Part shown: positions 15,749 to 35,311 of the stretch, one piece after another
Numbering within the stretch: the stretch's first letter is position 1
Layout: each line of letters begins with the position of its first letter
Virus record (IMG/VR): IMGVR_UViG_3300042261_002385
Span: 186,001 to 250,000 of that record
Length of the DNA stretch: 64,000 nucleotides
Reading direction: 5' to 3' (one strand)
Position numbers and translations under genes: made by a program
The notes under the pieces: model-generated
Databases searched by the model: none
What the model saw: only the letters and a program-made list of their open reading frames with translations
Told to the model about the DNA's origin: nothing

Positions 15749-17464
15749 TTATTTATTGTTGTAGTTTTTAAAAGTGTAAACTTGACTTTCTTTCAATTCT
15801 GCCTGAAAGGATGTCATAATCTCTTTCAACGTCGTATTAAAGTCTCTCATATCAGCTCCGAATTCACCAAGTGAAGCATACATATTTTCACCTTCGAATT
15901 GTAAAGTTCTTTTAGCTAATCTTGCAATTTTCTCAGCAACAACTTTTCTTTTGTTTTTATCAGATATAACTTCAATACTCTCATTATATAATGGTCCGAA
16001 ATCAGACATAGTTTTTGAATATTTACCATAAAGATGCTCATAAACTTCTTCATAAAGAGCCTTTATTGATTTTTTAGCATCTACGTCCATTTTCTTGTCT
16101 AAGATATTTTTGATAAATTCGTCAGTGATTCCGATTCCTTTATCTTTTTCATCTTTTAATACTTTAAGTGATTTCTGAGCATTTTTAAATGCTTGTGTTA
16201 AATGTTCTTCAGCTGAAGTAATTTCTACATTTCTTGGTTGTTTAGAAAACTCTTTAGAAAATTCTTTTTCAAAAATTGAATAAGTTAAAATAGACTCTCT
16301 TACTTTTTGTCTTTGGACTCTTGCTACTTCTTCAGCATTCTTTTTTCTAATTCTTTCTTCATCTTCTGTTGAACCAGATTCACCGGCCAACCTAACTCCT
16401 TCAAAAGAAATAATCATACTTTGAAGAGCTTGAAGATTTTTAATCATAGTAGGGTAAAGAGATTTAAGTGGTTTAGCATTTTTTTCTTCTTCAGCTGAAA
16501 TTGCTATTTGGTCACCTTCTTTTTCACCAGAACTAGAAGTTACTACAGTGATGTCTGTGTTTTCAACATAAGTGATATCTATATCCTGAATAAAGATATT
16601 TACCACACCATTTCCTTCTAAGTTACCACCAAAAGCCATATGTAAATAAGCCAAACAGTCTTCTACAGTTGGATAAGGTTTACAAACCCAGATTGCTAAA
16701 ATAATTAGACCAGCCATAAGTAACATACCACCAATAGCAGCCATAGCTACAGGTCCTAAACCTAAAGTTAAACCAGCTAAACTAATACCAGCCACTTTTA
16801 AAACTCCTATAATAATTAAACCGATTGTTGTCTTTTTCATGATTTGAGAAACGACACCGTTAAATCTAGCATTTTTAATACCTAAAGCATGAGCTATTTT
16901 TTCAAATACACCATAATATTTTACTTCATCATCACCAATAGCGTATGGACTATCAGCTTCATTTAATTTAACTTGATTACCAACTGATTGTAATTTATCA
17001 GGAGTCACACCTGCTTCTTGCCAGTTTACAGCGGACTTAGCTTTTTGACACAAAATCTGCCAAATTCTTTGAAAATTAGGTCTATTATTTTCATCACATA
17101 AACCGTTTGAAACAATAAAGTCCTTGAAACCACTCAACATATCTTTGATTTTAGTCCAAGTTTTTGTTCCGATTTCTTTTATTTTATTGAAAATTGATCC
17201 TGCTAACTTACTTAAGGAAAAGTTTTTAAAGAAATTTACAACTCCGGTAAAAAATTTACTAATTGCATCTTTAACATTAGTATAAACATTTGATACTGCT
17301 TGTTTTCCTTTTTGGATAAGATTTCCGATAAACTCTTCAGTTATTAGCGATTCTAATGGATTTATTATATCTTCAGCCGTGATGTTTTGATCAGTCAAAA
17401 ACTGACATTCCATCAATTTAGCCTCGTATAGTTTGGAGTAATTTGTGAAACTTTGAACTCTCAT
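15749..17464 (-). CDS. Putative packaged protein with TM hairpin; C-terminal domain shared with 54912..57809
   Basis: MRVQSFTNYSKLYEA; long hydrophobic stretch TTIGLIIIG...ILAIWV; DKGIG and VVAEKIAR shared with the 966-aa ORF. Confidence 0.78.
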   Translation of the reverse strand: MRVQSFTNYSKLYEAKLMECQFLTDQNITAEDIINPLESLITEEFIGNLIQKGKQAVSNVYTNVKDAISKFFTGVVNFFKNFSLSKLAGSIFNKIKEIGTKTWTKIKDMLSGFKDFIVSNGLCDENNRPNFQRIWQILCQKAKSAVNWQEAGVTPDKLQSVGNQVKLNEADSPYAIGDDEVKYYGVFEKIAHALGIKNARFNGVVSQIMKKTTIGLIIIGVLKVAGISLAGLTLGLGPVAMAAIGGMLLMAGLIILAIWVCKPYPTVEDCLAYLHMAFGGNLEGNGVVNIFIQDIDITYVENTDITVVTSSSGEKEGDQIAISAEEEKNAKPLKSLYPTMIKNLQALQSMIISFEGVRLAGESGSTEDEERIRKKNAEEVARVQRQKVRESILTYSIFEKEFSKEFSKQPRNVEITSAEEHLTQAFKNAQKSLKVLKDEKDKGIGITDEFIKNILDKKMDVDAKKSIKALYEEVYEHLYGKYSKTMSDFGPLYNESIEVISDKNKRKVVAEKIARLAKRTLQFEGENMYASLGEFGADMRDFNTTLKEIMTSFQAELKESQVYTFKNYNNK

Positions 17465-17520: not shown

Positions 17521-19047
17521 TTAGATTTCCGCTTCTAATCTTTTAATTTCATCCATAACTTCTTTTAACTCTTCCTTTTTTTGCATCATAATTTTCTTAT
17601 TCTTCTTTCTATCTGCATAGACATCTTCCAACATTAGAAGTGTAGGTGACTTTCTTTTTTCAAAAACAACACCATTCACACAAAGAACATGTTTTTCTAA
17701 GTCAATAGGTCGACCATTTGTGCATTTAGATTTGTCTTTTTCATCTTGAAGACCAACAAAAGTTTCAGGAGCTATAAAGAATTGTCTTTGAGTAGTAGGA
17801 TATAGTGAAGCAAAGTCATAAGTAACACACCACTGGTTCATTCCAACTACAGGGTCTTTTACCCAACCACCAGCAATCGTTGATTCAGCATCACCTTTTT
17901 CATCTCTGAAAAGTACTATGTTATCCATTTCTCTAAAACGGTTTCTTAAAACTCCTTCTGTGATGGCTAGTGAACCAAGTGCGTTGTTCATTTGAGAAAC
18001 AACATCTACGATTCTGATTTGAGCAAGTGATGAAATCGCATAGATGATAGAGATATAATTTCTAGCTTCGTGAATTTTTTGAACCAGAACACTATCGACA
18101 GCGTTATAATACATAAAAGTCTCAAAATCATCTTCATATAGTTTTTGAAGAGATCCGGTATATTTAATCTTTTCAACACCAACGAGTTTATGAGAAACAA
18201 AATCTAGTGAAGAAGACTCTTTTACCTTAATTGAAGTGTCACAGATTTCATAAAGTTGCATGTAATCAAAAATCATTCTGTGAGCAGGCACTTCATATTC
18301 AGTTCCCCAAGCTTTTGTTATTCTTTTAGTCAGTGAAGAAACAGCTGGATCAATTTTGTATTCTCTACCATTAGCCCATTTACTAATTTTACGAGAACGG
18401 TTTACTAAATATAACCAGTCATATTGTAAGAAGTTCCAACCTGTAAGCAGTGGCATTTTTGGAACCATTTTGTAGAAGAAAGCATATAACATATCAAACT
18501 CATCTTCATATTTAATATATTTGAACTTATATTCTGTTCCAAATTTTTCAAAATATTTATTAGTATTATTTAATATACGTTCTTGCATGTCTTCTGGCAT
18601 GTCTTTCAGACCCAAAAGAATGATTTTATCATCATAGACTATTGAAATAGAAAGAATTTGAGTAATAGCTCCTTCTTTTACAACGTTTCCGGCAGCATCT
18701 TTAACATCGGCTGCTTCAGGAAAACCATCAATAATCTCAGTCTCAATATCTATAAAGTATATCTTTGGTAGATTGAATTCAAATATCTCTTGTTTTTCTT
18801 TTTCCGGTAGTGAGTCTAAAAATTCATAAGTAGCATATCTATCTGGTTGGTTTACTTCTATTTGCTTAACGGATTTTCCATCCCAAGATCGAAACGAGGG
18901 GTGTCGTTGTGGATCTGTATCCTCACAAGCAACATATTTCATAGGATTATCCCAGTTATAATATTTGAGTTTTATATCACCTGTCTTATCAACATAGCTG
19001 ACTACAAGTTTTTTACTATTTGATAGATATTGAGTTTCTACAAGCAC
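17521..19047 (-). CDS. gp43: Family B DNA polymerase, N-terminal half (gp43A-like split polymerase)
   Basis: ExoI DIETE, ExoII GWNFLQYD, ExoIII YNAVD, motif A DFASLYP; stops in the fingers, lacking KxxxNSxYG and YGDTDS. Confidence 0.9.
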   Translation of the reverse strand: MLVETQYLSNSKKLVVSYVDKTGDIKLKYYNWDNPMKYVACEDTDPQRHPSFRSWDGKSVKQIEVNQPDRYATYEFLDSLPEKEKQEIFEFNLPKIYFIDIETEIIDGFPEAADVKDAAGNVVKEGAITQILSISIVYDDKIILLGLKDMPEDMQERILNNTNKYFEKFGTEYKFKYIKYEDEFDMLYAFFYKMVPKMPLLTGWNFLQYDWLYLVNRSRKISKWANGREYKIDPAVSSLTKRITKAWGTEYEVPAHRMIFDYMQLYEICDTSIKVKESSSLDFVSHKLVGVEKIKYTGSLQKLYEDDFETFMYYNAVDSVLVQKIHEARNYISIIYAISSLAQIRIVDVVSQMNNALGSLAITEGVLRNRFREMDNIVLFRDEKGDAESTIAGGWVKDPVVGMNQWCVTYDFASLYPTTQRQFFIAPETFVGLQDEKDKSKCTNGRPIDLEKHVLCVNGVVFEKRKSPTLLMLEDVYADRKKNKKIMMQKKEELKEVMDEIKRLEAEI

Positions 19048-19490: not shown

Positions 19491-20144
19491 TTATTTACCA
19501 GTCACTGCACCATAACCGACTCTTCCACATAAAAGTGTCGCTGCAGTAGCTACAGCGGTTGACCAACAAGCCACAAATATACTAAAACCAGTTCCAGCAG
19601 CAGCTGCAACTGCTATTGCGCCTGCAGCAATCTTAATTAGAGCTCCAAGAGCTACAAGAACAATAACTAAAGCAACTATTATCGCCAAAAATTTACCAGC
19701 TAATCCTAAAGCTTTCAAAATCTTTTGTCCCAAAGTTTGAGCATTTTCATTTATTGCAATAAGTCTAGATTCGTATAACGGTGTTCCGTATTTTGTTCTA
19801 GAAATACTTACAGAATCTTGAATCAATTCTTTTAATTCTTCTTCAGTTCCTTCTGGAGCTTGAGCAGCAGCTGTATCTGGATTAAAAGTTTCCATTTTTT
19901 GTTTCAATTCCTCAAGATCTCCTTCTGGTAAGGCATTTATTAGTTCTTGAGCTTTAGCAAATTTTCCACTATTAGCCGCGTCTTCTACAACTTTTTTGGT
20001 AGCCTCAGCCATTTCTACAGCTTTTTTATTTTTCCAACCAGAATACCACTTACTGATTTTTGAAAAGATGTTACCTTCTCCCCATAACCAACCTTCATTG
20101 GTTGTATTATAGTTAAAACTTTCGAATGTTTTTACGTATTTCAT
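19491..20144 (-). CDS. CTS-tagged protein with hydrophobic C-terminus, copy 1
   Basis: MKYVKTFESFNYNTTNEG; KYGTPLYES...INE before a ~65-aa hydrophobic tail. Confidence 0.82.
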   Translation of the reverse strand: MKYVKTFESFNYNTTNEGWLWGEGNIFSKISKWYSGWKNKKAVEMAEATKKVVEDAANSGKFAKAQELINALPEGDLEELKQKMETFNPDTAAAQAPEGTEEELKELIQDSVSISRTKYGTPLYESRLIAINENAQTLGQKILKALGLAGKFLAIIVALVIVLVALGALIKIAAGAIAVAAAAGTGFSIFVACWSTAVATAATLLCGRVGYGAVTGK

Positions 20145-20613: not shown

Positions 20614-21237
20614 TTATTTATTATCAAAAGCTGTATTCGTTCCAGAGCCCACTTCAAGTTCGGAACCATGCATAGACCTAACGACAAGGAAAGCTAAACC
20701 AGCAACAATTAAAGACCCAAAAACAACAAATCCAATCACGGCTGATGCAGCAACCACAGCGAGTATCGACGAAATAGAGACGATTAAAATTGTAATCAAT
20801 GTTAAATACTCAAAATTTAAACCAAGCCATTTAAGAACTCTTTTAGCTAAACTTTCAGAGGATTCATTAAGCGACATTTGATAAGATTCGTAAAGTGCGC
20901 TTCCGTATTTTGTCATTCTCATCTCATTAGCCGTTCCAATAGTTGCTTCAACCTCCGCTGCGCCTTCTTTGTCTTCTACCTTACCATCTGGTGTCCATTT
21001 TGCTACCCAATCTTTAAGATATAATTGTGACTTTTCAGGTAATTTCTTAAACACATCAACAGCCTTTTGAACTATCCCCGGGTTCTTTTCCAATTTTTGT
21101 GTTAGCATATCTGCTGCTTTTTTAGCCTGTTGATTTTTCCAGTTGTTCCACTTGTCTCTAACAGATCTGAAAAAATCCATTAATCCCTCATTTGTTGGGT
21201 CGTAGTTGAAACTTTCGAATGTTTTTACGTATTTCAT
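20614..21237 (-). CDS. CTS-tagged protein with hydrophobic C-terminus, copy 2
   Basis: MKYVKTFESFNYDPTNEG; KYGSALYES...LNE before a hydrophobic hairpin. Confidence 0.82.
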   Translation of the reverse strand: MKYVKTFESFNYDPTNEGLMDFFRSVRDKWNNWKNQQAKKAADMLTQKLEKNPGIVQKAVDVFKKLPEKSQLYLKDWVAKWTPDGKVEDKEGAAEVEATIGTANEMRMTKYGSALYESYQMSLNESSESLAKRVLKWLGLNFEYLTLITILIVSISSILAVVAASAVIGFVVFGSLIVAGLAFLVVRSMHGSELEVGSGTNTAFDNK

Positions 21238-21362: not shown

Positions 21363-21884
21363 TCAAAAGTCACAATCATAGTAATCTAAAATAATACCAT
21401 TTCTTTTGTTAATGAAAAGCAATTCATCTCTTCTTACTAATTGATATTCATAGTGTCTACCTGTTTTGAAAAGCGTTCTAATAAAGTCAATACCCTGACC
21501 GAAGTTGACAACTCTTTCATCAACCATCAAACATAGTATCTTAGTATCATCTTCATTTGAATAGTTTACTACTTCATTATCATGATCTTTTTCTAAACCT
21601 TTTTTCCCGTAACAGATGAATTTTGTAGTCAATTCCTCAGTATAGTCCGATATAATCTCTTTCGACAAATAAGCATTTGGTTTGTAAGTTATTACAATAT
21701 CATCACCGGCTTGAACATTTAAATCTTGTTCTTTTAGATAAAGTCTTATCCAGAAATAAATTTTTTGTTCTTCAACAATTTTCGAAGACGACACCTGTTC
21801 AACCTCATCAGGTAAACCGTCCGTGTCAATTTTTCTAATAGATTCTAAAAGTTGTTCTCTATAGTCTGTTTTTGCTATGTTCAT
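21363..21884 (-). CDS. Hypothetical protein
   Basis: 173-aa ORF directly downstream of thyA. Confidence 0.7.
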   Translation of the reverse strand: MNIAKTDYREQLLESIRKIDTDGLPDEVEQVSSSKIVEEQKIYFWIRLYLKEQDLNVQAGDDIVITYKPNAYLSKEIISDYTEELTTKFICYGKKGLEKDHDNEVVNYSNEDDTKILCLMVDERVVNFGQGIDFIRTLFKTGRHYEYQLVRRDELLFINKRNGIILDYYDCDF

Positions 21885-21899
21885 TTTTTTAATTATTTT

Positions 21900-22931
21900 T
21901 TAATTAGATAATGGAAATTTTATTGTATCACAAGATTTATAATCAAATATTTCAATATCTTCATATTTTAAGTCAAAAATTGATTTGTTGTTTAATTTTA
22001 AATTAGGTAATTTATATGTTTCTCTTTTCAACTGTTCTTTCACACCTTTTATTTGATTAGAATAAATATGACAATCTCCACCTGAAAAAATTAAATCATT
22101 AGGTATCATATTAACTTCTTTTGCTAAGAGATGAAGTAAAATAGCATACGATGCTATATTGAATGGTATACCTAAAGGAACATCACAGGATCTTTGAGTC
22201 CACATCAAATCTAACTTTCTATCAGGAACTCCAATTTCGTCTAATTTATCTTTAGTCATATCATCAGCGAATGTTATACTTCTTCCTCTTGAATCACACC
22301 ACCATTTTACTCTTTCATCAAAAGTCAATAAAGTAGTGTAACATTGAAATCCATAATGACAAGGAGGTAGAGTCATCTGACTTAATTGTCCGACGTTCCA
22401 AGCAGAAACCATTAATCTTCTAGAATCTGGATTTGTTTTAAGATCGTTGATAAGATTAGATATCTGGTCTAATGGTTTATGGTAAACATACTCAGTTCCA
22501 TTATGATATTCCTGTTCACCTCTCCACCTTCTCCATTGAGCCCCATACACAGGTCCGAGTTCACCCCACTTTTTAGAAAACTCATCATCAGTTTTTATTT
22601 TATCAATAAATTCTTCTTTTGATAAATATGAAGAATTAGATGGATGATTAGTATAGGCTTTATACGCATCACCATCCCAAATATGAACACCGTTTTCAAC
22701 TAAATATTTAATATTAGTATCACCTCTTAAAAACCAAATCAATTCATGAATTACGGCTTTAGTAAATATTTTTTTTGAAGTTAGAAGTGGAAATCCCCAA
22801 TTCATATTAAATCTCATATTATATCCAAAGACTGAAATTGTTCCAGTGCCAGTTCTATCTTTTTTTTCAACACCATTTTCTAAAATATATTCTAAAAAAC
22901 TAAGGTATTGTTTATCTACTTTATTTTTCAT
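21900..22931 (-). CDS. thyA: Thymidylate synthase
   Basis: DRTGTGT, LGPVYGAQWR, PDSRR, LPPCH, QRSCD, PFNIASY, HIYSN. Confidence 0.97.
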   Translation of the reverse strand: MKNKVDKQYLSFLEYILENGVEKKDRTGTGTISVFGYNMRFNMNWGFPLLTSKKIFTKAVIHELIWFLRGDTNIKYLVENGVHIWDGDAYKAYTNHPSNSSYLSKEEFIDKIKTDDEFSKKWGELGPVYGAQWRRWRGEQEYHNGTEYVYHKPLDQISNLINDLKTNPDSRRLMVSAWNVGQLSQMTLPPCHYGFQCYTTLLTFDERVKWWCDSRGRSITFADDMTKDKLDEIGVPDRKLDLMWTQRSCDVPLGIPFNIASYAILLHLLAKEVNMIPNDLIFSGGDCHIYSNQIKGVKEQLKRETYKLPNLKLNNKSIFDLKYEDIEIFDYKSCDTIKFPLSN

Positions 22932-23749
22932 ACAGTAATTTTATTGATTTTTTTCTGAATAGTTGGATAAGGACAATAATCTATCCATTTTGGATCGAAC
23001 CAAAAAGTTCTACCAGTCTTATCTTTACAAGAGATGCCTTTTTGATAATATACCCACTTTTGAAATTCCTCATAGTCAGTGTCAAATGGATTTTTCCAAT
23101 CTGACAATTGACCTCCATTCAAGTGGTAAGCCTTAATTGGAATATCTCTACACATAGATAATATTTTAGAATTATCTTTTATAACTTTTCTGGCCTGTTC
23201 AAATGGATTTACATCTAAATAATATAGTATAGTGCTTCTAAGATAGTTGCCTATACCATTAAAGTATTCTTGGTTAAGAAGTGCTTCACAAATTGGTTTA
23301 TCAAATGCCTTTTTATCGATGTTGTTCATAACATTGTCGTAAAAATCACTAAAAAATTTAGATGGATCTGGTCCACGTTTTATACCAGTAAATCCACCAA
23401 TTCGATATTTTGGTCCCATATAGGAACCATATAGTAAAAGAGACCAACCATCAATAGTGTCTACTCTCATTCTACAATATTTAGTATCGTTCCAGACTCC
23501 AGTGGGAACCCACTTCCAATTACCAGACATTCCCATAAACACTGAGATTTTATGTGTTTCAGTTTTGTTGAAGAATCTTATGACCAATTCTTTACCTAAA
23601 GACTCAGCATCTATTTGAAATTCATCTAATAAATGAAACTGTTCTGGATTATTTCCCTTTAAAACATGAAAAGATTTATTAAAGACTTTTCTTTTAACAT
23701 TCTGATTTATATAATCAGCCATTATTTTGAGTTCAGCTAGTTCCGGCAT
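22928..23749 (-). CDS. nei: Fpg/Nei-family DNA glycosylase, NEIL1-like
   Basis: Catalytic N-terminal PE; GKEL; GMSG; H2TH KAFDKPICEALLNQEYFNGIGNYLR; zincless-finger-like DKTGRTFWF. Confidence 0.92.
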   Translation of the reverse strand: MPELAELKIMADYINQNVKRKVFNKSFHVLKGNNPEQFHLLDEFQIDAESLGKELVIRFFNKTETHKISVFMGMSGNWKWVPTGVWNDTKYCRMRVDTIDGWSLLLYGSYMGPKYRIGGFTGIKRGPDPSKFFSDFYDNVMNNIDKKAFDKPICEALLNQEYFNGIGNYLRSTILYYLDVNPFEQARKVIKDNSKILSMCRDIPIKAYHLNGGQLSDWKNPFDTDYEEFQKWVYYQKGISCKDKTGRTFWFDPKWIDYCPYPTIQKKINKITV

Positions 23750-23796: not shown

Positions 23797-24150
23797 CTAT
23801 ACACACATCTTTTTAACCCATTTAACTAAGATGTCACCGTGACAAGATTTTCCACCTCCACCCAGATTTTTACACCAACAACCAAGTGTCTTATCTTTGA
23901 GTTCACAAAGAGAATCCATCAATTCTTTATTACTGAGTAGATATTCTTCATAAGCATTTACAATTATTTTACGAGGTGTTCCCTTTGGAAAGCTGTTTCT
24001 TAATTCTTTAGGATAAGCCCACTTGTTAAATTTACCACCAGGTAGACGACCAATATAAATATCAAATGGTTCTTTTTTGAAATGAACTACTTTTACTAAA
24101 TGTTTGTGACCACTATCAGACTTCTTAAAACTATCAAAAAAATCTTCCAT
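23797..24150 (-). CDS. DUF4326-like protein
   Basis: DIYIGR...NKWAYP...LKDKTLGCWC...CHGDIL. Confidence 0.8.
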   Translation of the reverse strand: MEDFFDSFKKSDSGHKHLVKVVHFKKEPFDIYIGRLPGGKFNKWAYPKELRNSFPKGTPRKIIVNAYEEYLLSNKELMDSLCELKDKTLGCWCKNLGGGGKSCHGDILVKWVKKMCV

Positions 24151-24674: not shown

Positions 24675-24731
24675 GGTAAAAAAATGGCTTTTTATTTTAA
24701 ATATATAATAAGTAAAAAAAATAAAAAGTCT

Positions 24732-25091
24732 ATGAAATACTTAAAGACATTTGAATCTTTTTCTCCTATAAACGAAGAAGAGGAATTTATTTCAGCAGTA
24801 AAAGACATGATATCTGGTAAATCTGCTTATAAAACAACTATTAAATACTTAGAAAGTAAATCTAAAGAGGCTGAAGAGGCTATTAAGATTTATAAGGAAA
24901 TTCAAGATTCCGGTAAACCAGCAAAGCAACAATTAGACAAAGTTGATAGAATAAACAGACTTGGTAGAATGTGGGCAGAAGCAAATAAAATGGAAGGTAA
25001 TGACTATGATTACAATCACGTAGACACAGTTATGAAAGGCGAATGGGGTAGAAAATACCACGGTGGAACAAATGTGACTGTTGGAGAATAA
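24732..25091 (+). CDS. Small CTS-tagged protein
   Basis: Start moved to ATG 24732: MKYLKTFESFSPINEEEE; AATATATA at 24700-24707. Confidence 0.78.
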   Translation: MKYLKTFESFSPINEEEEFISAVKDMISGKSAYKTTIKYLESKSKEAEEAIKIYKEIQDSGKPAKQQLDKVDRINRLGRMWAEANKMEGNDYDYNHVDTVMKGEWGRKYHGGTNVTVGE

Positions 25092-25635: not shown

Positions 25636-25791
25636 ATGAACTCAAAGAAAAACAGCAAATTATTTAAAAGTTTAGTCAAAGAAAGAATTATGACTAAACT
25701 TTGTAAAGAAAGAGGTTGGAATATTAACGAACTGACAGTAAGACAAATGTTGTTTATAACCAATCACCCAGATGTAAAAAATTCTAAATGA
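25636..25791 (+). CDS. Small basic hypothetical protein
   Basis: ATG 25636 follows AATATATA (25624-25631); 51 aa. Confidence 0.55.
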   Translation: MNSKKNSKLFKSLVKERIMTKLCKERGWNINELTVRQMLFITNHPDVKNSK

Positions 25792-26863
25792 AACCTTTTA
25801 AATGTTCAGCGGGAATCTGTTTCAAATCCTCAATATAATCAATTAATTCAGCTCTTGTTGCTATAAAATGATACTCACCTGATTGACTTGCGCCATGTAA
25901 ACTCTGTCCATCCCAAGTGAAGTCCATAAAACCAGTAGAAAGACCAGTAGAATTCATATATCCAACAATCGTTTCCCTCTCAACTTCAATTTGTTCATCT
26001 GATATCATCATTTTTTTAGTCTTACCATCCCAACTTATCCAAGTAAAATTGTGTGTCTGAAAATTTTGGTTCAAATCAGACCAATTTTCATCTTCATCTT
26101 CATCATACCATAGGTCATTTTTATGGTCATAACCAGGAGTTTTGACGACAGGAAGTGATTCCCAATCTATCTTACAAACTGCGTCACATAATTTTTCTAA
26201 GTGTCTAATATCTTGTCTTTCAGAGTGAGAGTGCTCATTATAGTAACCAACTGAGATATTAGTACATTCTGAAATTAAATTAGTAAACTGAGCAGAATCT
26301 GTGTATATTCCAGTTGGATCTGGTCTATAGTTAAATGAGCTTTCAACAACATTCAAATTATTAGACAACTCTTTAGCGAATTCTAGAGAACAACAAACAC
26401 CATATAATTGTTCAGTTATTACCGAATCAGTTCCTCTCCTGTCAAATGAAATACATTTTGTGATGTAATTTGATTCAGGTCTTTTAGACCAAACTTTTGC
26501 CAGTCTACTTGAACCAACACAACCTCTTTCTTCACCAATAAAAAAATAATAGAGACCAGGAATATTTTTTTCAATCATATAAAGCAAAACAACCATTCCG
26601 GCTTTATCATCAGCGCCTAAAATTGAGGTTCCGTCTGTTCTAATAATATTACCATCTAATACATGTTTTACTTTCTCTTGTTTACGGTCTGCAGTATCAA
26701 GGTGGCAAGTAAACATAGTAGAAGGATTGTTACCGATTTCAATAAAATAATTACCATTTCCATCTTCTTTAAAACCGTTTGGTAAATGATTTTTTAGCTC
26801 GGTCTCTGTTCCGTGTGGATACGTTTTTGAAGTAAGTTTTAAAAACTTCTTTTTTACATTCAT
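25784..26863 (-). CDS. M28/M20-family zinc peptidase
   Basis: CHLDT, GADDKAG, GEERGCVGS, FDRRG, TDSA, EH. Confidence 0.85.
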   Translation of the reverse strand: MNVKKKFLKLTSKTYPHGTETELKNHLPNGFKEDGNGNYFIEIGNNPSTMFTCHLDTADRKQEKVKHVLDGNIIRTDGTSILGADDKAGMVVLLYMIEKNIPGLYYFFIGEERGCVGSSRLAKVWSKRPESNYITKCISFDRRGTDSVITEQLYGVCCSLEFAKELSNNLNVVESSFNYRPDPTGIYTDSAQFTNLISECTNISVGYYNEHSHSERQDIRHLEKLCDAVCKIDWESLPVVKTPGYDHKNDLWYDEDEDENWSDLNQNFQTHNFTWISWDGKTKKMMISDEQIEVERETIVGYMNSTGLSTGFMDFTWDGQSLHGASQSGEYHFIATRAELIDYIEDLKQIPAEHLKGFI

Positions 26864-27857: not shown

Positions 27858-30482
27858 ATGAGTCGAGGAAACACCATTTTTGGTCATAAATATAAAAGCA
27901 ATTCTAGGCCAAAAATTCAACCTAAAATTTTGAAAAGTTCGGCTGTATCACAATCGATTTCACAAAGTATTATAGCTCCAAAAAAAAAATTAGATGTTAT
28001 TATTGTATCAGTAGATTATAACGATTTTCTGATACTCACTCTAGAACACAATAAAAAAATATTTGATAATATAACAGTTGTCACAACACATGATGACATG
28101 ATGTGTCAAAATATTTGTCGGAAATACAACACAAGATGCATTACGACTGATATTTTTTATGAGAATGATTATAAATTCAACAAAGGAGCGGCAATAAACA
28201 AAGCTATAGAATCACTAAATAATCCGGAACTAATTCTATTATTAGATGCGGATATAATTGTCACTAGTCCAATAAATTTAGAAGAAATAGAAGATGATGT
28301 ATTATACACTTCGGATAGATGGATATGTTACAATTATTTTCAATATGAGAGATGGCAAAAGAATGAAATTTCTGTCGTAAATCTTCCAAAATATGAAAAG
28401 GATAATAATTATGGATTTTTTCAACTATTCAGTTGTAAAAATCCATTTGGTATTGAGTGGTATCCTAGTGATCTAGAAAATTCAAGTCACCCTGACCTAA
28501 AATTTAGTAGCCTTTTTCCGACTAAAAAAACAATAAAATCAGATATTATACATTTAGGAGATGTTAAAAAAAACTGGGATGGCAGAACATCTGAGAAATT
28601 TATTACAGATGAAACTTTCTATGAACTTTATGATAGTAATATCGATCTTGATAAAAATGAAATTAATGTTTATGACACAAAAACAGAAATTTCCAAATAT
28701 GGCAAATTTCGTATTCAAAATCAGATAAGCTTTGAGCATCACAATGGAGGTTGGTCATATGCACTAAAATCAATGAATAAAATCAATGGCATAAACGGTA
28801 TACGATTAGAGTGTTTTTTAGACATGAATTTCTGTTGGATTAATTCAAATAAAGAACAAATAAAAGAAAATTGGGTTGGGATTTTACATAATCCAATTGA
28901 AGCACCGACGTGGTATTTAAATCAAGTCAGAAATAGACAAATATTAAAATCATCGTCTTTTATTAAAAGTCTCGAATGCTGCAAAGGATTATATGTCTTT
29001 AGTCAACATGAAAAAAATATATTATCTGAACAAATTCTTAAATTTGGACACGAAACAAAAATAAATGTTTTAAGACATCCAACGACAGAGTCTGACAAAA
29101 AATGGTCAATAGAAAAATTCTACTCAGACAAAAAAATTATACACATAGGCTGGTGGTTAAGAGACATTCAATCTTTCTACAGGTTAGATGTAAATCTAAG
29201 AAAACTTAGAATAAAGCTCAATCAAAGTATAGAAAATAAAATAAACCAGATTTTTAATTTAAAATCAGATTCAGTTATTGAAATAGAAAATTTGAACGAA
29301 AAGGAATATGATGACATTCTTTGTAGTTCAGTAGTTTTCATAAATCTAATCGATTCGGTTGTGAACAACACCGTTTTAGAATGTATAGAAAGAAATACGC
29401 CAATAATAGTAAACAGAAATCCATCAATTGAAGAATATATTGGCAAAGACTATCCTCTATTCTTTGATGAGATATCAGATGTCTCAGAACTATTGACTTA
29501 TGATAAATTAACACAAGCGAATTCTCATCTAAAAAAAATTAATTTAGATAGAGATTTAGGTTTACAAATCCAAAACTCAGAAATTTATAAATCAATCGAA
29601 TCAGACTTAGACGTGACAGATATGCTCAAACCAGGTGATTTAGAGGACTCAGAAGGTGGAATTTATAATCCAGGATTCTGTGAATTTAGGGGAAAAAACT
29701 ATATGATAGTAAGAGTTGAAAAAAACACGGAAAAGGAAAGAGGTATTCGTGACCTTTGGCTAAGAACTACTTCAGTTCCATATATAGTAGAACTTGACTC
29801 AAAATTTGAGATTATTAATAAATTTCCATTAAGAGTAGTTGGAGATTTCATAAGAGTCGAAGATTTTAGGTTATTTACATTTAACAATAAACTTTATTCA
29901 AATCATGTTGTAGTAGATAAATCTAAAAAAATATATCCGGTCATTTCAGAAGTTGACCTACATAATCAAACTTTGAAAATTCTCGGAACAATCGAACTAG
30001 ACATATCTAAGAGGGAAGTTGAAAAGAATTGGTCTTTCTTTACTCACAATGATGAATTATTTTTAATATACTCGGTTTCACCATGGGTTATTTTCAAAAT
30101 TGACTTAGAACAACTTACAGGAGTCAATATCAAAAATTATGAGACAAAGTTTGATTGGATTGAGTCTGGTTTTATATCAAACAGCACTAATCCTATAAAA
30201 TTAGACACAAATACAAACATTATGGGGTTTCATAGCAGAGATAATAAGTTTATCTATCATCAAGGTTTTTTAATATTTGATGACAATTTAAATTACATAA
30301 ACTCATCAAAAGAGCCATATCTATCAGGTGGGGATTACGACACAATACATCCAAATGTTATTTATACATCATCAATATCTTTAAGTAGTGAAAAAAGACT
30401 AGTGGTGTTTGCAGGTGATGGTGACACTAAGACAATTAAAATAGAATTTAAAAAAGATAAAATATGGAAAGAATTATTATAA
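27858..30482 (+). CDS. Multidomain glycosyltransferase: GT-A, central GT-like domain and C-terminal GH130-like beta-propeller
   Basis: VSVDYNDFL...FNKG...LLLDADI; central HIGWWLR...NNTVLECI; C-terminal YNPG...EDFRL...EKNWSFF. Confidence 0.75.
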   Translation: MSRGNTIFGHKYKSNSRPKIQPKILKSSAVSQSISQSIIAPKKKLDVIIVSVDYNDFLILTLEHNKKIFDNITVVTTHDDMMCQNICRKYNTRCITTDIFYENDYKFNKGAAINKAIESLNNPELILLLDADIIVTSPINLEEIEDDVLYTSDRWICYNYFQYERWQKNEISVVNLPKYEKDNNYGFFQLFSCKNPFGIEWYPSDLENSSHPDLKFSSLFPTKKTIKSDIIHLGDVKKNWDGRTSEKFITDETFYELYDSNIDLDKNEINVYDTKTEISKYGKFRIQNQISFEHHNGGWSYALKSMNKINGINGIRLECFLDMNFCWINSNKEQIKENWVGILHNPIEAPTWYLNQVRNRQILKSSSFIKSLECCKGLYVFSQHEKNILSEQILKFGHETKINVLRHPTTESDKKWSIEKFYSDKKIIHIGWWLRDIQSFYRLDVNLRKLRIKLNQSIENKINQIFNLKSDSVIEIENLNEKEYDDILCSSVVFINLIDSVVNNTVLECIERNTPIIVNRNPSIEEYIGKDYPLFFDEISDVSELLTYDKLTQANSHLKKINLDRDLGLQIQNSEIYKSIESDLDVTDMLKPGDLEDSEGGIYNPGFCEFRGKNYMIVRVEKNTEKERGIRDLWLRTTSVPYIVELDSKFEIINKFPLRVVGDFIRVEDFRLFTFNNKLYSNHVVVDKSKKIYPVISEVDLHNQTLKILGTIELDISKREVEKNWSFFTHNDELFLIYSVSPWVIFKIDLEQLTGVNIKNYETKFDWIESGFISNSTNPIKLDTNTNIMGFHSRDNKFIYHQGFLIFDDNLNYINSSKEPYLSGGDYDTIHPNVIYTSSISLSSEKRLVVFAGDGDTKTIKIEFKKDKIWKELL

Positions 30483-31522
30483 ACGGTTTTTTCGGAAAAG
30501 GTAACTGTGGAGATGAAGCCATATTACACACCTGGTATGAAAAATTATCACCAGAATTTAGAATAGTGGCTTCAGTTGACTCTGATTTGTTTGAAAGACC
30601 TGGAAATTTTGAAAATAATAAAATTTATCATTCAATAGATTTGATACACAATAGAAGATTAGATATTTTCTGCCGAGAAGATATAAAAGCGTATATAATA
30701 GGTGGAGGTGGATTAGGTTTAGGATTTGGCATTGAACAGTGGCTACATGCATCAATTAGAAATAAAAAAATGTTTTACTTAGGCACAATTGTTCATGAGG
30801 AATTTCTGATAGGCGATGAACACATGTATCAAATTAATAAAAACTTTTTTAAATCTTTCAATTATATAATGGTCAGAGACCACATTTCTAAAAAAAATCT
30901 TAAAGAAAAATTCGGTGTTGATTCAGATAATTATCCTGATATAGCCTTTGCGTTGACTCCAGAAAAAACAAATTTTTCCTTACCAAAAAAATTTATGACT
31001 GTCACCGTAAGAGACAATGGAAATAATGACAAAGACTCTATTATGAAATGGTTAGAAAAAATTAAAAAATTTGCAAAAGAAAGAAATTGTGAAATTATAT
31101 ACCTACCATTTGATAAAACAGATAAGTTTCTGTTAAAGTCAATTGGTATAGAAATTCCAGAGGAGTATCAACAAATATATTGGCAGCCAAAAATGGTCAA
31201 ATACATTATGTCTAAAGCAGAAATGGTTTTTTCATTAGGAAGATTCCATCCATTAGTATTTTCACTTTCGACTGGAGTTACCTGTTATTACATTCAATGT
31301 CAAGAGACTGACTATAGTTGGAGATATGATAAAAATACTCAAGATAAAAGTTTCAATATATTAAATGATTGGGGCTTAAGCAAACATTATTTAACAAATG
31401 ATGATATAGATTGTAAATTCAGAAAAAATAGTAAATTCTACGCAGTAGCGGTAGAAAGTCAAAAAAGAATTATTGAATTTTTTGAGGTTCTGAAACAAAA
31501 ACTAACTACAAACTATGATTAA
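30464..31522 (+). CDS. Polysaccharide pyruvyl transferase family protein
   Basis: GFFGKGNCGDEAI, IIGGGGL, VRDHIS, PDIAF, RFHPLV. Confidence 0.85.
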   Translation: MERIIINGFFGKGNCGDEAILHTWYEKLSPEFRIVASVDSDLFERPGNFENNKIYHSIDLIHNRRLDIFCREDIKAYIIGGGGLGLGFGIEQWLHASIRNKKMFYLGTIVHEEFLIGDEHMYQINKNFFKSFNYIMVRDHISKKNLKEKFGVDSDNYPDIAFALTPEKTNFSLPKKFMTVTVRDNGNNDKDSIMKWLEKIKKFAKERNCEIIYLPFDKTDKFLLKSIGIEIPEEYQQIYWQPKMVKYIMSKAEMVFSLGRFHPLVFSLSTGVTCYYIQCQETDYSWRYDKNTQDKSFNILNDWGLSKHYLTNDDIDCKFRKNSKFYAVAVESQKRIIEFFEVLKQKLTTNYD

Positions 31523-32699
31523 TCACCATAAAATTGAATATCCAAAATTTTCATTTGTGATGGCACCGTTTTATTTTATAGGTGATGATGAGCTACTTAA
31601 ATCACAACTTTTAAACTTAAATAATCAAACAGTTATAGATTTCGAATTGATAGTTCCTGATCCACATTATAAAAAAAGAGAATGGCTAAAAAATTTTGTC
31701 GAATGTCTAAAATATAATGTTATACACTTTGAATATGTTCCAAACAAAGAAACCCCTAAGTCTTTCGACTACGGTATATTAAATACCGCAGTTCTAATGT
31801 CAAATAGTAATAAAATAGTTACATTTCAAGATTGGAGATTTTGTAACAGAGATTTAGTAAAAAAATTATTAAAATTTAGAAAATACAAATTCATAGGACT
31901 GAGGTGGCAGGTTCTTTATAAAGACGACTCATCAATTTCAACTCACTGGGGAAAAAGCACAATAGATTTAAACATCAATCAAGCGAATGAGTTATATTCG
32001 ACAGGTAACTTTCCTGAAATAAATATAAATTACGAATTTGTAAACACTTTCCATAATTCTTGCTGGGGTCATTACTGTATTGATAAAGATTTGTGGTTAG
32101 AAGTCAATGGTATAGATGAGGTTGTGACAAATACTAGACACTATGCAGACTTAGATATTAATACGAGATTAGAATATTATCACAAACTCAATGGTCTTAA
32201 AATTGAAATACCAATGTTAGAAAACGCGATGGTTAGAATTATGCACTCAAAGGGAAACTTCTTCGGTGGTTCTAATATAGAGTTGGAACATAATTACAAT
32301 GTCGAACACATAACCTGTTGTTTTTCAAACACAGGCTCTATGAATGATAAAGTTTTTACTGAATATGTTGTTGAAAAAATAACTAAGAATGAATACTCTA
32401 AAATTTATGAAATACCATACTCAACAAACTTCGTAAAAAATAATACAAATAGCTCACTCGACTCTCAATATGCAGTAATTGGTTTTGAATGTAATAATTG
32501 TGGACTTATCGGTGAGACACCTCACTGGTATGAGAAATCACCAAATTCAAGATATATTGCAACAATTGGAGCTGGGTTGAAAAATAAAAAAATAGGAAGA
32601 AATCTAAAAAAAATTCAAATAGATCTAGACAACTGTAATTTTGAGGAAAAGGTGAAGCTTTTAGAAAAATCCTGGTATGATACAAAATATTTACAATAA
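31515..32699 (+). CDS. GT2-like glycosyltransferase
   Basis: N-terminal SFVM...QTVIDFELIVPD; LEVNGIDE. Confidence 0.6.
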   Translation: MINHHKIEYPKFSFVMAPFYFIGDDELLKSQLLNLNNQTVIDFELIVPDPHYKKREWLKNFVECLKYNVIHFEYVPNKETPKSFDYGILNTAVLMSNSNKIVTFQDWRFCNRDLVKKLLKFRKYKFIGLRWQVLYKDDSSISTHWGKSTIDLNINQANELYSTGNFPEININYEFVNTFHNSCWGHYCIDKDLWLEVNGIDEVVTNTRHYADLDINTRLEYYHKLNGLKIEIPMLENAMVRIMHSKGNFFGGSNIELEHNYNVEHITCCFSNTGSMNDKVFTEYVVEKITKNEYSKIYEIPYSTNFVKNNTNSSLDSQYAVIGFECNNCGLIGETPHWYEKSPNSRYIATIGAGLKNKKIGRNLKKIQIDLDNCNFEEKVKLLEKSWYDTKYLQ

Positions 32700-33331
32700 T
32701 GAAGAAAAACAAATACAAATTTACAGCTAATTGGTTCGGAAGTGAAGAACAAATCGAAGATTTGAAATCAGTTCTACCAAATTCATCCTCGGAACTGCAT
32801 ATGTTAGAAATTGGTTCATATGAAGGAAGAAGTACAGTTTGGTTTTTAGAAAATTTACTTTTGAATGAAAAATCGACTATTACTTGTGTAGATCCTTGGC
32901 TAGATTACTCACAAGACAAAAAAAGTTTAGACTCTTACAATTCCCCAGAGGCAGACTGGAAATTTGGAACAAATAAAATTGTAGAAACTTTTTTGTTCAA
33001 TATTGAATCCTCAGGTTTTAGAAACAAAGTGTCTGTCGAAAGAGGTCTATCAACAGAAATTTTACCAAAATTACTACTGAATTCAAATAAATATGATATA
33101 ATATTCATAGACGGTAACCACGTTGCACCATTTGTTCTTATAGATGCGGTTTTATCTTGGTCCTTATTAAAAAATGGTGGAATTTTAATATTTGATGACT
33201 ATCTATGGATGCCGGATTTGTATAAGACACTTTCACCTAAACTAGCTATCGATTCATTTGTAGAAGTTTTTGAAGATTACATTGATGTAATTTTAGACAA
33301 ATATCGAAAAGTTTTAAAAAAAAATAGCTAA
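32699..33331 (+). CDS. Class I SAM-dependent methyltransferase (Methyltransf_24-like)
   Basis: LEIGSYEGRS, VDPW, YDIIFIDGNH, LKNGGILIFDDY. Confidence 0.9.
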   Translation: MKKNKYKFTANWFGSEEQIEDLKSVLPNSSSELHMLEIGSYEGRSTVWFLENLLLNEKSTITCVDPWLDYSQDKKSLDSYNSPEADWKFGTNKIVETFLFNIESSGFRNKVSVERGLSTEILPKLLLNSNKYDIIFIDGNHVAPFVLIDAVLSWSLLKNGGILIFDDYLWMPDLYKTLSPKLAIDSFVEVFEDYIDVILDKYRKVLKKNS

Positions 33332-33333
33332 TT

Positions 33334-33963
33334 ATGGCAAACGGAATTTATAAAATAACTGAAGATTTTGAAAAAGCTTTGTCGGAATATACAGGAGCAC
33401 CACATGTCATTACAGTAGATAATCAAAGTAATGCTCTTTTTTTAGCACTAATGTATGAAAAAGTGAGTGGTAAAGAAATTACAATACCATCACGGACTTA
33501 TCCATCTGTTCCCTGTGAAATAATTCATGCAGGCGCAAAAGTCAAATTTAGAAAAGTAAAGGGTAAAACCTTAAAAGGTTCTTATCAACTTGAGCCAACA
33601 AACGTTTGGGATTCAGCTCTAAGCTTTACGGCTGATATGTATAAACCCGGAACTCATATGTGTATCTCATTCACTGGACCATATAAACATTTTAAATTAT
33701 CAAAAGGAGGAGCAATTTTAACTGATAACTACGAAGCTTATTTGTGGTTTAAAAGAGCTAGATATTCGGGTAGAAGAGAGTGTTCATATCACGACGACCA
33801 TTTTGACATGATTGGTTGGAACTTCTACATGATGCCAGAATTAGCTACACGAGGTCTATTACTTATGAATCAATTCTATAACGTTGATGGAACAAAAAAA
33901 CACAATGAAGATCTTGAACTACCTTATCCAGATCTGTCAAAATTTGAGATATACACAAGATGA
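33334..33963 (+). CDS. DegT/DnrJ/EryC1-like PLP aminotransferase (short form)
   Basis: FEKALSEYTGA, WDSA, SFTGPYKHFKLSKGGAI, GWNFYM; only 209 aa. Confidence 0.8.
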   Translation: MANGIYKITEDFEKALSEYTGAPHVITVDNQSNALFLALMYEKVSGKEITIPSRTYPSVPCEIIHAGAKVKFRKVKGKTLKGSYQLEPTNVWDSALSFTADMYKPGTHMCISFTGPYKHFKLSKGGAILTDNYEAYLWFKRARYSGRRECSYHDDHFDMIGWNFYMMPELATRGLLLMNQFYNVDGTKKHNEDLELPYPDLSKFEIYTR

Positions 33964-34547: not shown

Positions 34548-34548
34548 T

Positions 34549-35280: not shown

Positions 35281-35311
35281 ATATACTATAAAATAAAAAA
35301 TAATTATTTAA

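What the first reader, a model, noticed from the sequence alone, without database searches (positions are those of the whole stretch)
22928..23749. Phage glycosylase closely resembling eukaryotic NEIL1
Seen: KAFDKPICEALLNQEYFNGIGNYLRSTILY...PFEQAR and DKTGRTFWF. Established, from memory: human NEIL1 has KAFDRPICEALLDQRFFNGIGNYLRAEILY...PFEKAR and a zincless finger (DRHGRTIWF); bacterial Fpg/Nei have a C4 zinc finger, absent here. Inference: a NEIL1-clade enzyme in a bacteriophage, relevant to the origin of NEIL1; overlap with thyA suggests a pyrimidine-damage module.
Basis: partly seen in the sequence, partly recalled or inferred. Interest (0 to 1): 0.65.

Follow-up and report, generated by a model that had tools for sequence, protein, structure and literature searches.

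The report
NEIL1-like DNA glycosylase in freshwater jumbo phage
A 436-kb freshwater tailed phage carries a conserved DNA-repair glycosylase that is far closer to animal NEIL1 than to bacterial Nei or Fpg. It belongs to a large, apparently undescribed phage and bacterial sister family of NEIL1, and its own sub-clade has rebuilt one DNA-contact loop.

Summary
The minus-strand ORF 22928..23749 encodes 273 aa containing the quoted motifs.

**Similarity to NEIL1.** Human NEIL1 is by far the best solved relative, by sequence, family profile and predicted fold. The catalytic Pro2, Glu3 and Lys53 and the finger Arg247 are conserved. The C-terminal finger has no zinc ligands.

**Host genome.** The contig is a 436-kb tailed jumbo phage from freshwater metagenomes.

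**Phylogeny.** It is not inside the eukaryotic NEIL1 clade. It sits in a jumbo-phage clade within a large radiation of phage genes, plus a few genuinely bacterial ones (Poribacteria). Whether eukaryotic NEIL1 is nested in that radiation or sister to it is unresolved (AU p = 0.445).

**Clade-specific change.** The jumbo-phage clade uniquely replaces the DxRRFGxW loop, which holds NEIL1 Arg118 and Phe120, with YGSYMGPKY.

**thyA link.** The 4-nt overlap with a canonical thyA is real. The linkage is synteny specific to this phage lineage, not a feature of the family.

**Most likely function.** A bifunctional glycosylase/AP lyase that repairs oxidised bases in phage DNA. Substrate range is uncertain.

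The parts
22928..23749 (-). Gene for a 273-aa NEIL1-like Fpg/Nei-family DNA glycosylase/AP lyase (P0001)
   Evidence: ORF and translation. Human NEIL1 E 4e-29 by phmmer. Family profile against NEIL1 7e-70. AF2 pLDDT 94.7, and the top 50 Foldseek hits are all NEIL1 at TM 0.80. dN/dS about 0.05-0.10 against orthologues.
23741..23746 (-). Codons for Pro2 and Glu3, the N-terminal nucleophile and catalytic acid
   Evidence: Pro is near-invariant and Glu invariant across phage, bacterial and eukaryotic members and the Fpg/Nei outgroups.
23591..23593 (-). Codon for Lys53, equivalent to human NEIL1 Lys54
   Evidence: Invariant in the GKE motif.
23405..23431 (-). Remodelled intercalation loop, residues 107-115 (YGSYMGPKY), replacing the canonical DxRRFGxW
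   Evidence: All 13 jumbo-clade rows have G/Y/M/G/Y where human NEIL1 has D116, R118, R119, F120 and W123. All 77 other short family members keep D and F, and 76 of 77 keep R118; the eukaryotes all keep D116 and W123 and mostly keep R118 and F120 (8 of 11 each).
23189..23311 (-). Helix-two-turn-helix DNA-binding block, residues 147-187, including the NGIGNYLR motif
   Evidence: Pfam H2TH E 3e-6. Q160, G167, Y169 and P182 are invariant. About 80% identical to human NEIL1 over this block.
22994..23047 (-). Zincless finger, residues 235-252: a beta-hairpin with Arg247, equivalent to human Arg277
   Evidence: Pfam Neil1-DNA_bind E 0.005. Predicted strands at 239-242 and 248-251. R247 and W250 are conserved and there are no Cys4 ligands.
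21900..22931 (-). Canonical thymidylate synthase thyA (343 aa); its start overlaps the glycosylase stop by 4 nt (ATGA, 22928-22931)
   Evidence: Pfam 1.4e-99. Passes two NCBIfam thymidylate synthase equivalog cut-offs. Overlap read directly. Downstream of nei, mostly within about 1.5 kb, in roughly 20 of 54 IMG/VR loci.
23797..24150 (-). Upstream DUF4326 gene (117 aa) on the same strand, 47 nt before nei
   Evidence: Pfam DUF4326 1e-13. Syntenic in many related jumbo-phage loci. No terminator-like site between the genes.
21363..21884 (-). Conserved downstream gene of unknown function (173 aa), syntenic with nei and thyA
   Evidence: Found downstream in most related loci at 43-75% identity. No significant family match.

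Best explanation
The gene encodes a functional, compact (273 aa, no C-terminal tail) NEIL1-type member of the Fpg/Nei superfamily, carried by a 436-kb freshwater jumbo myophage.

**Inferred mechanism, by homology with NEIL1.**
1. The Pro2 amine attacks C1' of a flipped-out damaged base, assisted by Glu3, and forms a Schiff base.
2. Lys53, the H2TH motif and Arg247 of the zincless finger hold the lesion phosphates.
3. Beta- or beta,delta-elimination then nicks the strand.

**Likely role.** It clears oxidised or ring-opened bases from phage DNA during replication. It is probably co-transcribed with DUF4326, thyA and other nucleotide and replication genes. The phage supplies a PolB and an NAD-dependent ligase. 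No phage 3'-end-cleaning enzyme was found, so that step is presumably done by the host.

**Evolution.** It belongs to a large phage-borne, and occasionally bacterial, family that forms a superclade with eukaryotic NEIL1. Its own jumbo-phage sub-clade has replaced the Arg/Phe intercalation loop with a conserved YGSYMGPKY loop. It also keeps an Fpg-like GGxQLxDW loop where NEIL1 has its Lys242/Tyr244 lesion loop. Substrate range therefore cannot be copied from human NEIL1.

**Shown:** family, fold, residue conservation, selection, phylogenetic position, phage context. **Inferred:** catalysis, substrates, in vivo role.
For: - **Sequence.** phmmer against PDB gives NEIL1 4e-29 and E. coli Nei 2e-4. 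The family profile gives NEIL1 7e-70 over its full length including the finger, MvNei1 3e-26, plant Fpg 6e-25, E. coli Fpg 6e-22, E. coli Nei 1e-14, NEIL3 3e-9 and NEIL2 1e-5.
- **Fold.** AF2 pLDDT 94.7. The top 50 Foldseek PDB hits are all human NEIL1, at TM 0.80 and 30% identity.
- **Residues.** P2, E3, E6, K53, M74, R125, N164, N168, Y169, R171, Y235, R247 and W250 are conserved.
- **Selection.** dN/dS is about 0.05-0.10.
- **Tree.** NEIL1-like against Fpg/Nei 99/95. Jumbo clade 100/100.
- **Phage context.** TerL, tail sheath, DnaB, SbcD, RNR and PolB. A 436,265-bp record with 28 tRNAs. An NAD ligase.
- **Distribution.** 54 IMG/VR loci. Atlas clusters are 78-93% viral, apart from one 63% cluster, and mainly Uroviricota.
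- **Transcription hint.** An exact 246-nt contig inside the gene occurs in a metatranscriptome library.
Against: - No biochemical data exist.
- The clade lacks equivalents of NEIL1 Arg118 and Phe120 (Y110 and G112 instead) and of Asp116. These normally fill the void and wedge the DNA, so activity or specificity may differ.
- On its own the protein scores below the Pfam gathering cut-offs for H2TH, Fapy_DNA_glyco and Neil1-DNA_bind.
- No phage-encoded AP endonuclease or 3'-phosphatase was found. PNK3P and AP_endonuc_2 are absent. The EEP protein is DNase I-like. The AAA_33 protein is a kinase domain only.
- The RNA-library contig does not prove transcription, because DNA carry-over is possible.
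Confidence: 0.75

Rival explanations
1. The enzyme is catalytically active but re-targeted. The rebuilt intercalation loop and the Fpg-like recognition loop adapt it to another job. Examples are lesions in single-stranded or fork DNA, a modified base of the phage or host, or attack on host DNA rather than repair of phage DNA.
For: The D/R/R/F/W to G/Y/M/G/Y replacement is clade-wide and strictly conserved in 13 of 13 rows, while every other family member keeps the canonical loop. The lesion loop differs from NEIL1 Lys242/Tyr244. The genome also encodes a DNase I-like nuclease.
Against: All catalytic and phosphate-binding residues are retained. Met74, the third void-filling residue, is kept. 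No DNA hypermodification genes were found next to the gene, and thyA is canonical. Nothing specifically points to host-DNA targeting.
Confidence: 0.15
2. The gene was recently captured from a eukaryote or a giant virus. On this reading it is a true NEIL1 orthologue that moved into a phage.
For: Local identity to human NEIL1 in the H2TH block is about 80%. NEIL1 is the top hit by every measure.
Against: All named eukaryotes form their own clade (99/97) without any phage row. These comprise animals, four amoebozoans, a euglenid and an MMETSP protist. The window protein sits in a phage-only group (99/94). Overall identity to NEIL1 is only about 30%. There are hundreds of diverged phage clusters. 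MvNei1 is far more distant than NEIL1.
Confidence: 0.03
3. The protein is a catalytically dead or lyase-only DNA-binding relic, or the contig is cellular rather than viral.
For: Two canonical DNA-intercalating residues are missing. IMG/VR labels the record 'provirus'.
Against: Purifying selection is strong and the nucleophile and acid are invariant. GC is a uniform 31% across 436 kb, apart from a stretch of giant ORFs. Terminase and tail sheath are in the same window.
Confidence: 0.05

Closest known systems
Human and metazoan NEIL1 (endonuclease VIII-like 1; PDB 1TDH, 5ITT, 6LWx)
   Same: - Best match by sequence (4e-29), profile (7e-70 over the full length) and fold (TM 0.80).
- Same Pro2, Glu3, Lys54 and Met81 equivalents.
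- Same NGIGNYLR H2TH motif.
- Same zincless finger with the Arg277 equivalent.
   Different: - 273 aa, with no disordered C-terminal interaction tail.
- Arg118, Arg119, Phe120, Asp116 and Trp123 are replaced by Y, M, G, G and Y.
- The Lys242/Tyr244 lesion loop is replaced by an Fpg-like GGxQLxDWxNP loop.
- Lies outside the eukaryotic clade.
Mimivirus MvNei1 (L315; PDB 3A42, 3A45, 3VK7), the known 'viral NEIL1 orthologue'
   Same: A virus-encoded, compact Fpg/Nei enzyme with a zincless finger (PMC3188539 and its references).
   Different: - Much more distant. The family profile scores 96 bits against MvNei1 and 239 bits against NEIL1, and the MvNei1 match stops before the finger.
- MvNei1 is not a hit at E <= 1 for the single protein.
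- The host virus is an NCLDV of amoebae, not a tailed phage.
E. coli endonuclease VIII (Nei) and Fpg/MutM
   Same: Same superfamily fold and the same N-terminal Pro-Glu and Lys catalytic set. The recognition-loop motif resembles the Fpg GGxxLxDF motif.
   Different: - Nei and Fpg have a Cys4 zinc finger, which is absent here.
- NCBIfam scores are 56 and 47 bits against cut-offs of 252 and 203.
- Separated in the tree at 99/95.
Plant and fungal Fpg (Arabidopsis Fpg1, PDB 3TWK)
   Same: Zincless finger; Fpg/Nei fold.
   Different: Profile score is only 6e-25, over residues 1-213, without the finger. The literature treats its zincless finger as having an independent origin (PMC3188539).

Membership tests
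Fpg/Nei (H2TH) DNA glycosylase superfamily | Two-domain fold: N-terminal beta-sandwich, H2TH motif and C-terminal finger | tested here: met
   AF2 pLDDT 94.7. Foldseek gives TM 0.80 to NEIL1 chains. All three Pfam domains are detected, each below its gathering cut-off in hmmscan.
Fpg/Nei (H2TH) DNA glycosylase superfamily | N-terminal Pro nucleophile after Met removal, Glu3, and the catalytic or DNA-binding Lys in the GKx motif | tested here: met
   P2, E3 and K53 are present. E3 and K53 are invariant and P2 is near-invariant across the 77-sequence family alignment; the outgroups mostly share them.
Fpg/Nei (H2TH) DNA glycosylase superfamily | Glycosylase and AP-lyase activity through a Schiff base | not testable with these tools
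   Needs an enzyme assay.
NEIL1 type (broad sense: the superclade including eukaryotic NEIL1) | Zincless finger: a beta-hairpin without Zn ligands that carries the conserved Arg (human Arg277) | tested here: met
   R247 and W250 are conserved. Only C241 and C259 are present, they are not conserved, and there are no CxxC pairs. The hairpin is predicted at 239-251. The profile aligns to NEIL1 through residue 282.
NEIL1 type (broad sense: the superclade including eukaryotic NEIL1) | Groups with NEIL1 to the exclusion of bacterial Fpg/Nei | tested here: met
   Careful ML tree gives 99/95. The quick 126-row tree gives aLRT 91. Caveat: the outgroup is E. coli Nei and Fpg plus Poribacteria-phylum Fpg only. 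MvNei1, NEIL2/3, plant Fpg and actinobacterial Nei were compared only by PDB profile scores.
Eukaryotic NEIL1 orthologue group (strict sense, 'MeNeil1') | Falls inside the eukaryotic NEIL1 clade | tested here: not met
   The eukaryote clade of 21 rows has 99/97 support and excludes all phage and MAG rows. The window protein is in a phage-only clade (100/100).
Eukaryotic NEIL1 orthologue group (strict sense, 'MeNeil1') | Void-filling and wedge residues Met81, Arg118 and Phe120 | tested here: not met
   The Met is kept (M74). Arg118 becomes Y110 and Phe120 becomes G112, in 13 of 13 jumbo-clade rows.
Eukaryotic NEIL1 orthologue group (strict sense, 'MeNeil1') | Long disordered C-terminal protein-interaction tail (about 100 aa) | tested here: not met
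   The protein ends 21 residues after the finger, at 273 aa. Eukaryotic members are 365-791 aa.
Bacterial endonuclease VIII (Nei), Nei2 and Fpg equivalogs | Score above the NCBIfam equivalog cut-off, and a Cys4 zinc finger | tested here: not met
   56.5, 19.5 and 47.4 bits against cut-offs of 252, 400 and 203. No zinc ligands.
Tailed phage (Caudoviricetes) gene | Encoded on a contig with hallmark phage packaging and tail genes | tested here: met
   TerL (Pfam 3e-20, PHROG 6e-49) and tail sheath (PHROG 8e-95) are in the window. The record is a 436-kb virus record.

The most novel reading that the evidence does not exclude
Eukaryotic NEIL1 descends from this phage and bacterial family of compact zincless-finger glycosylases. 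On this reading an early eukaryote acquired it once from a bacterium or phage, so NEIL1 is neither a metazoan invention nor a product of eukaryote-internal Nei divergence.

The ML tree nests the eukaryote clade three nodes deep in the phage radiation. The phage and bacterial members also keep an Fpg-like recognition loop, which looks ancestral. The AU test does not reject a simple sister relationship.
Probability: 0.4. Interest if true: 0.7.

Novelty: new variant of a known kind. Interest (0 to 1): 0.5.

Why it matters
- **Breadth of NEIL1.** The DNA-repair literature I could reach treats NEIL1 as a metazoan clade with one giant-virus orthologue. This family changes that picture. Hundreds of tailed-phage lineages and some bacteria (pelagic Poribacteria) carry a compact enzyme much closer to NEIL1 than MvNei1 is. 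Amoebozoa and a euglenid also have NEIL1.
- **Testable origin.** The origin of NEIL1 and of its zincless finger becomes testable with real sister sequences.
- **Model enzymes.** The family offers small, tail-less NEIL1 models for structural and enzymological work.
- **A natural experiment.** The jumbo-phage sub-clade has replaced the Arg/Phe intercalation loop, which bears on how orphan-base contact and DNA wedging shape specificity.
- **Phage biology.** Large freshwater phages invest in their own oxidative-damage base excision step.

Tried and rejected
- **Cultured phages.** tblastn against 50,697 GenBank phage records found nothing at E <= 1e-5. PHROGs gives only a weak hit to an unannotated family, phrog_21295, at 2e-9.
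- **Bacterial and archaeal genomes.** The first pattern scan of GTDB species genomes found no relatives. The second used a single H2TH pattern, so its 11 loci are a lower bound.
- **Giant-virus origin.** The long metagenomic contigs (up to 656 kb) first suggested a giant virus of eukaryotes. I rejected this because of the T4-type terminase and the tail sheath.
- **Phage BER partners.**
  - No PNK3P, AP_endonuc_2, HhH-GPD or UDG was found.
  - I first took the EEP hit for an ExoIII-like AP endonuclease. It is DNase I-like or MnuA-like.
  - The AAA_33 hit is a bare kinase domain.
- **thyA as a base-modifying hydroxymethylase.** Rejected, because it passes the thymidylate synthase equivalog cut-offs.
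- **Regulatory signals.** Promoter-like sites are no more frequent than in shuffled sequence (25 against 20.9). There are no terminator-like sites.
- **Literature.** Four full-text searches found no paper on phage NEIL1-like enzymes. The marine jumbo-phage and moraphage papers do not mention glycosylases.
- **Gaps in the tree.** MvNei1, NEIL2/3, plant Fpg and actinobacterial Nei are not in the tree, because no referenceable sequences were available. They were compared by profile scores only.
Full report
**Observation.** In the PDB alignment the NEIL1 chains carry KAFDRPICEALLDQRFFNGIGNYLRAEILY..PFEKAR and DRHGRTIWF opposite exactly these residues. The stop codon overlaps the start of the next gene by 4 nt, ATGA at 22928-22931. 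That gene is a canonical thymidylate synthase: Pfam 1.4e-99, and above two NCBIfam equivalog cut-offs.

**What the genome is.** The window is bases 186001-250000 of a 436,265-bp IMG/VR virus record with a CheckV completeness estimate of 95%.
- It is 31.5% GC and encodes 28 tRNAs.
- The window holds a T4-type large terminase, a 1332-aa tail sheath (PHROG 8e-95), a DnaB-like helicase, SbcD, class I ribonucleotide reductase and PolB.
- This makes it a jumbo myophage, not a giant virus of eukaryotes and not cellular DNA.
- A higher-GC stretch elsewhere in the genome consists of giant ORFs, not host genes.
- The stretch occurs, at half or more of its sampled words, in freshwater, lake-water and drinking-water metagenomes from about nine studies.

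**What the protein is.**
- *Single-sequence search of PDB:* human NEIL1 4e-29, E. coli Nei 2e-4, mimivirus L720 0.02, NEIL3 0.025, Fpg about 0.03.
- *Profile of 77 family members:* NEIL1 7e-70 (239 bits), aligned from residue 1 through the zincless finger at NEIL1 residue 282. The next best are MvNei1 3e-26, Arabidopsis Fpg 6e-25, L. lactis Fpg 5e-24, E. coli Fpg 6e-22, E. coli Nei 1e-14, MvNei2 2e-12, NEIL3 3e-9 and NEIL2 1e-5.
- *Fold:* the AlphaFold2 model is confident (pLDDT 94.7, pTM 0.91). Its 50 best Foldseek matches in the PDB are all human NEIL1, at TM about 0.80 and 30% identity.
- *Conserved residues:* Pro2, Glu3, Glu6, Lys53 (human Lys54), Met74 (Met81), Arg125, Asn164, Asn168, Tyr169, Arg171, Tyr235, Arg247 (Arg277) and Trp250.
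- *Finger:* it has no Cys4 ligands.
- *Bacterial equivalogs:* the NCBIfam models for Nei, Nei2 and Fpg are missed by a wide margin.
- *Pfam:* on its own the protein scores just under the gathering cut-offs for all three domains, although relatives pass them.
- *Selection:* against orthologues at 77-85% identity, dN/dS is about 0.05-0.10 with saturated dS.

**How it differs from NEIL1.**
1. There is no C-terminal tail.
2. The loop that in NEIL1 carries Asp116, Arg118, Arg119, Phe120 and Trp123 reads YGSYMGPKY here. All 13 members of the jumbo-phage clade share G/Y/M/G/Y at these positions. All 77 other short family members keep D and F, and 76 of 77 keep R118. The eukaryotes all keep D116 and W123 and mostly keep R118 and F120 (8 of 11 each). 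Arg118 and Phe120, together with Met81, are the residues that occupy the void and wedge the DNA in NEIL1 (established knowledge from the NEIL1-DNA structures). This is a derived change that is likely to matter for function.
3. Where NEIL1 has its Lys242/Tyr244 lesion-recognition loop, the phage and bacterial members have a GGxQLxDWxNP motif that resembles the Fpg GGTTLKDF loop.

**Relatives and phylogeny.**
- The word-index search found 1206 homologues. The top 120 are 65-99% identical, all metagenomic, on contigs up to 656 kb, and JGI often auto-names them 'endonuclease VIII-like 1'.
- The exhaustive search of 50%-identity representatives found 849 clusters at E <= 1e-3 and 65 at E <= 1e-30.
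- Interleaved among the roughly 260-280-aa metagenomic proteins are named eukaryotic NEIL1s. These include tuatara, primates, crab, sea urchin, oyster, Hydra and a sponge. They also include the amoebozoans Pelomyxa, Mastigella, Endostelium and Planoprotostelium, the euglenid Ploeotia and an MMETSP protist.
- IMG/VR holds 54 loci on viral contigs of 14-476 kb. ESM-Atlas clusters are mostly 78-93% viral and mainly Uroviricota.
- Two lineages that branch near the base of the tree sit in phage-like neighbourhoods.
- Among GTDB species genomes, a pattern-limited scan found 11 MAG loci.
- The Poribacteria locus L063 is flanked by a sulfatase, RlmL, an L,D-transpeptidase and a GFO/IDH/MocA oxidoreductase. 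It is therefore genuinely chromosomal. These MAGs show no other Fapy_DNA_glyco gene, whereas other genomes of that phylum have canonical Fpg.

The careful ML tree used 80 rows under LG+C20 PMSF. Its outgroup was E. coli Nei and Fpg plus three bacterial Fpg. Its main results are:
- NEIL1-like sequences separate from Fpg/Nei at 99/95.
- All eukaryotes form one clade at 99/97.
- The window protein lies in a jumbo-phage clade at 100/100, inside a phage-only group at 99/94.
- The eukaryote clade is nested three moderately supported nodes deep (93/48, 93/78, 94/83).

An AU test does not reject the alternative in which all non-eukaryotic members form one clade (delta lnL 4.3, p = 0.445). The protein is also not a member of the eukaryotic NEIL1 clade, and the direction of transfer is open. 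The 126-row quick tree gives the same picture.

**Context and partners.**
- DUF4326, nei, thyA and orf173 lie on one strand with no terminator-like site between them. Promoter-like hits are no more frequent than chance.
- This order, together with two upstream genes (a 155-aa ORF and a PepT-like peptidase), recurs in many jumbo-phage loci. thyA follows nei, mostly within about 1.5 kb, in roughly 20 of 54 loci. It is not found next to nei in the most distant family members, L042-L055 apart from L049.
- The linkage is therefore lineage synteny within a nucleotide-metabolism and replication region. That is weak evidence for a dedicated 'pyrimidine-damage module'.
- The genome encodes an NAD-dependent ligase and PolB.
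- It has no detectable PNK3P, Nfo-type AP endonuclease, HhH-GPD glycosylase or UDG.
- Its EEP-family protein is DNase I-like or MnuA-like, not ExoIII-like. An AAA_33 protein is a bare kinase domain.
- Processing of the 3' end after lyase action is therefore presumably left to the host. This is an inference.
- Contigs from RNA libraries match exactly inside nei (23197-23442) and over DUF4326. Contigs cannot prove transcription.

**Novelty.** The DNA-repair literature I could search describes NEIL1 as a metazoan clade ('MeNeil1') with mimivirus enzymes as the viral relatives (PMC3188539). Four full-text searches found nothing on NEIL1-like enzymes of tailed phages. Automated annotation already labels many of these proteins 'endonuclease VIII-like 1', so the resemblance is not hidden. 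The enzyme is a known kind. The new elements are the size and viral or bacterial nature of the NEIL1 sister family, and the rebuilt intercalation loop of this clade.

**Limits.**
- MvNei1, NEIL2/3, plant and fungal Fpg, and actinobacterial Nei could not be placed in the tree, because no referenceable sequences were available. Their distance rests on profile scores.
- The outgroup branches are long.
- No activity data exist.
- No human contig was fetched or compared, and no step needed referral.

Noticed in passing
window 19491-20144 (-), 20614-21237 (-), 24684-25091 (+): Three paralogous genes share a near-identical N-terminus (MKYVKTFESFNY / MKYLKTFESF). Two have hydrophobic C-terminal segments. 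The third has 16 extra residues before the shared motif, which suggests a mis-called start. Relatives at 27-37% identity recur next to the nei-thyA block in other loci.
   Followed up: no
window 17521-19047 (-) and 15749-17464 (-): The family-B DNA polymerase looks split. The 508-aa ORF carries the exonuclease domain and only the first third or so of the polymerase domain. The adjacent 571-aa ORF has no Pfam hit. It may be a split or highly diverged PolB.
   Followed up: no
window 30464-36070 (+): A glycan-biosynthesis cluster in a phage: polysaccharide pyruvyl transferase, SAM methyltransferase, a short DegT-type aminotransferase, a PglD-like acetyltransferase and two GT2 glycosyltransferases. 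It could modify virion proteins, host surface or DNA.
   Followed up: no
window 50311-54309 (-) and 38493-44390 (-): The tail sheath is unusually long at 1332 aa, with the sheath homology confined to the C-terminal half. A separate 1965-aa protein carries a CBM_5_12 carbohydrate-binding module.
   Followed up: no
window 23797-24150 (-): A DUF4326 gene sits immediately upstream of nei and is conserved in that position or nearby in many related jumbo phages. Its function is unknown, so a functional link to the glycosylase is possible.
   Followed up: partly
L063 (Poribacteria MAG contig PAYP01000023.1) 3001-3813; also L059, L061, L062, L064-L066: Pelagic Poribacteria MAGs from several studies carry a NEIL1-like zincless glycosylase among ordinary cellular genes. 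They have no other Fapy_DNA_glyco gene, while other genomes of the phylum have canonical Fpg.
   Followed up: partly
Family alignment, P0001 residues 211-222: Phage and bacterial NEIL1-like proteins keep a GGxQLxDWxNP motif like the Fpg 8-oxoG capping loop, where eukaryotic NEIL1 has the Lys242/Tyr244 loop. It may be an ancestral character that could help polarise the tree.
   Followed up: partly
G000 36.9-75.6 kb and about 284-298 kb (outside the window): 27 of the 28 tRNA genes lie in clustered arrays on one strand. A block at 40-47% GC consists of giant ORFs of 1695 aa and more than 2300 aa.
   Followed up: partly
window 25784-26863 (-): A PepT-like (M20 peptidase family) 359-aa gene is conserved in synteny upstream of the nei block in many related loci.
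   Followed up: no
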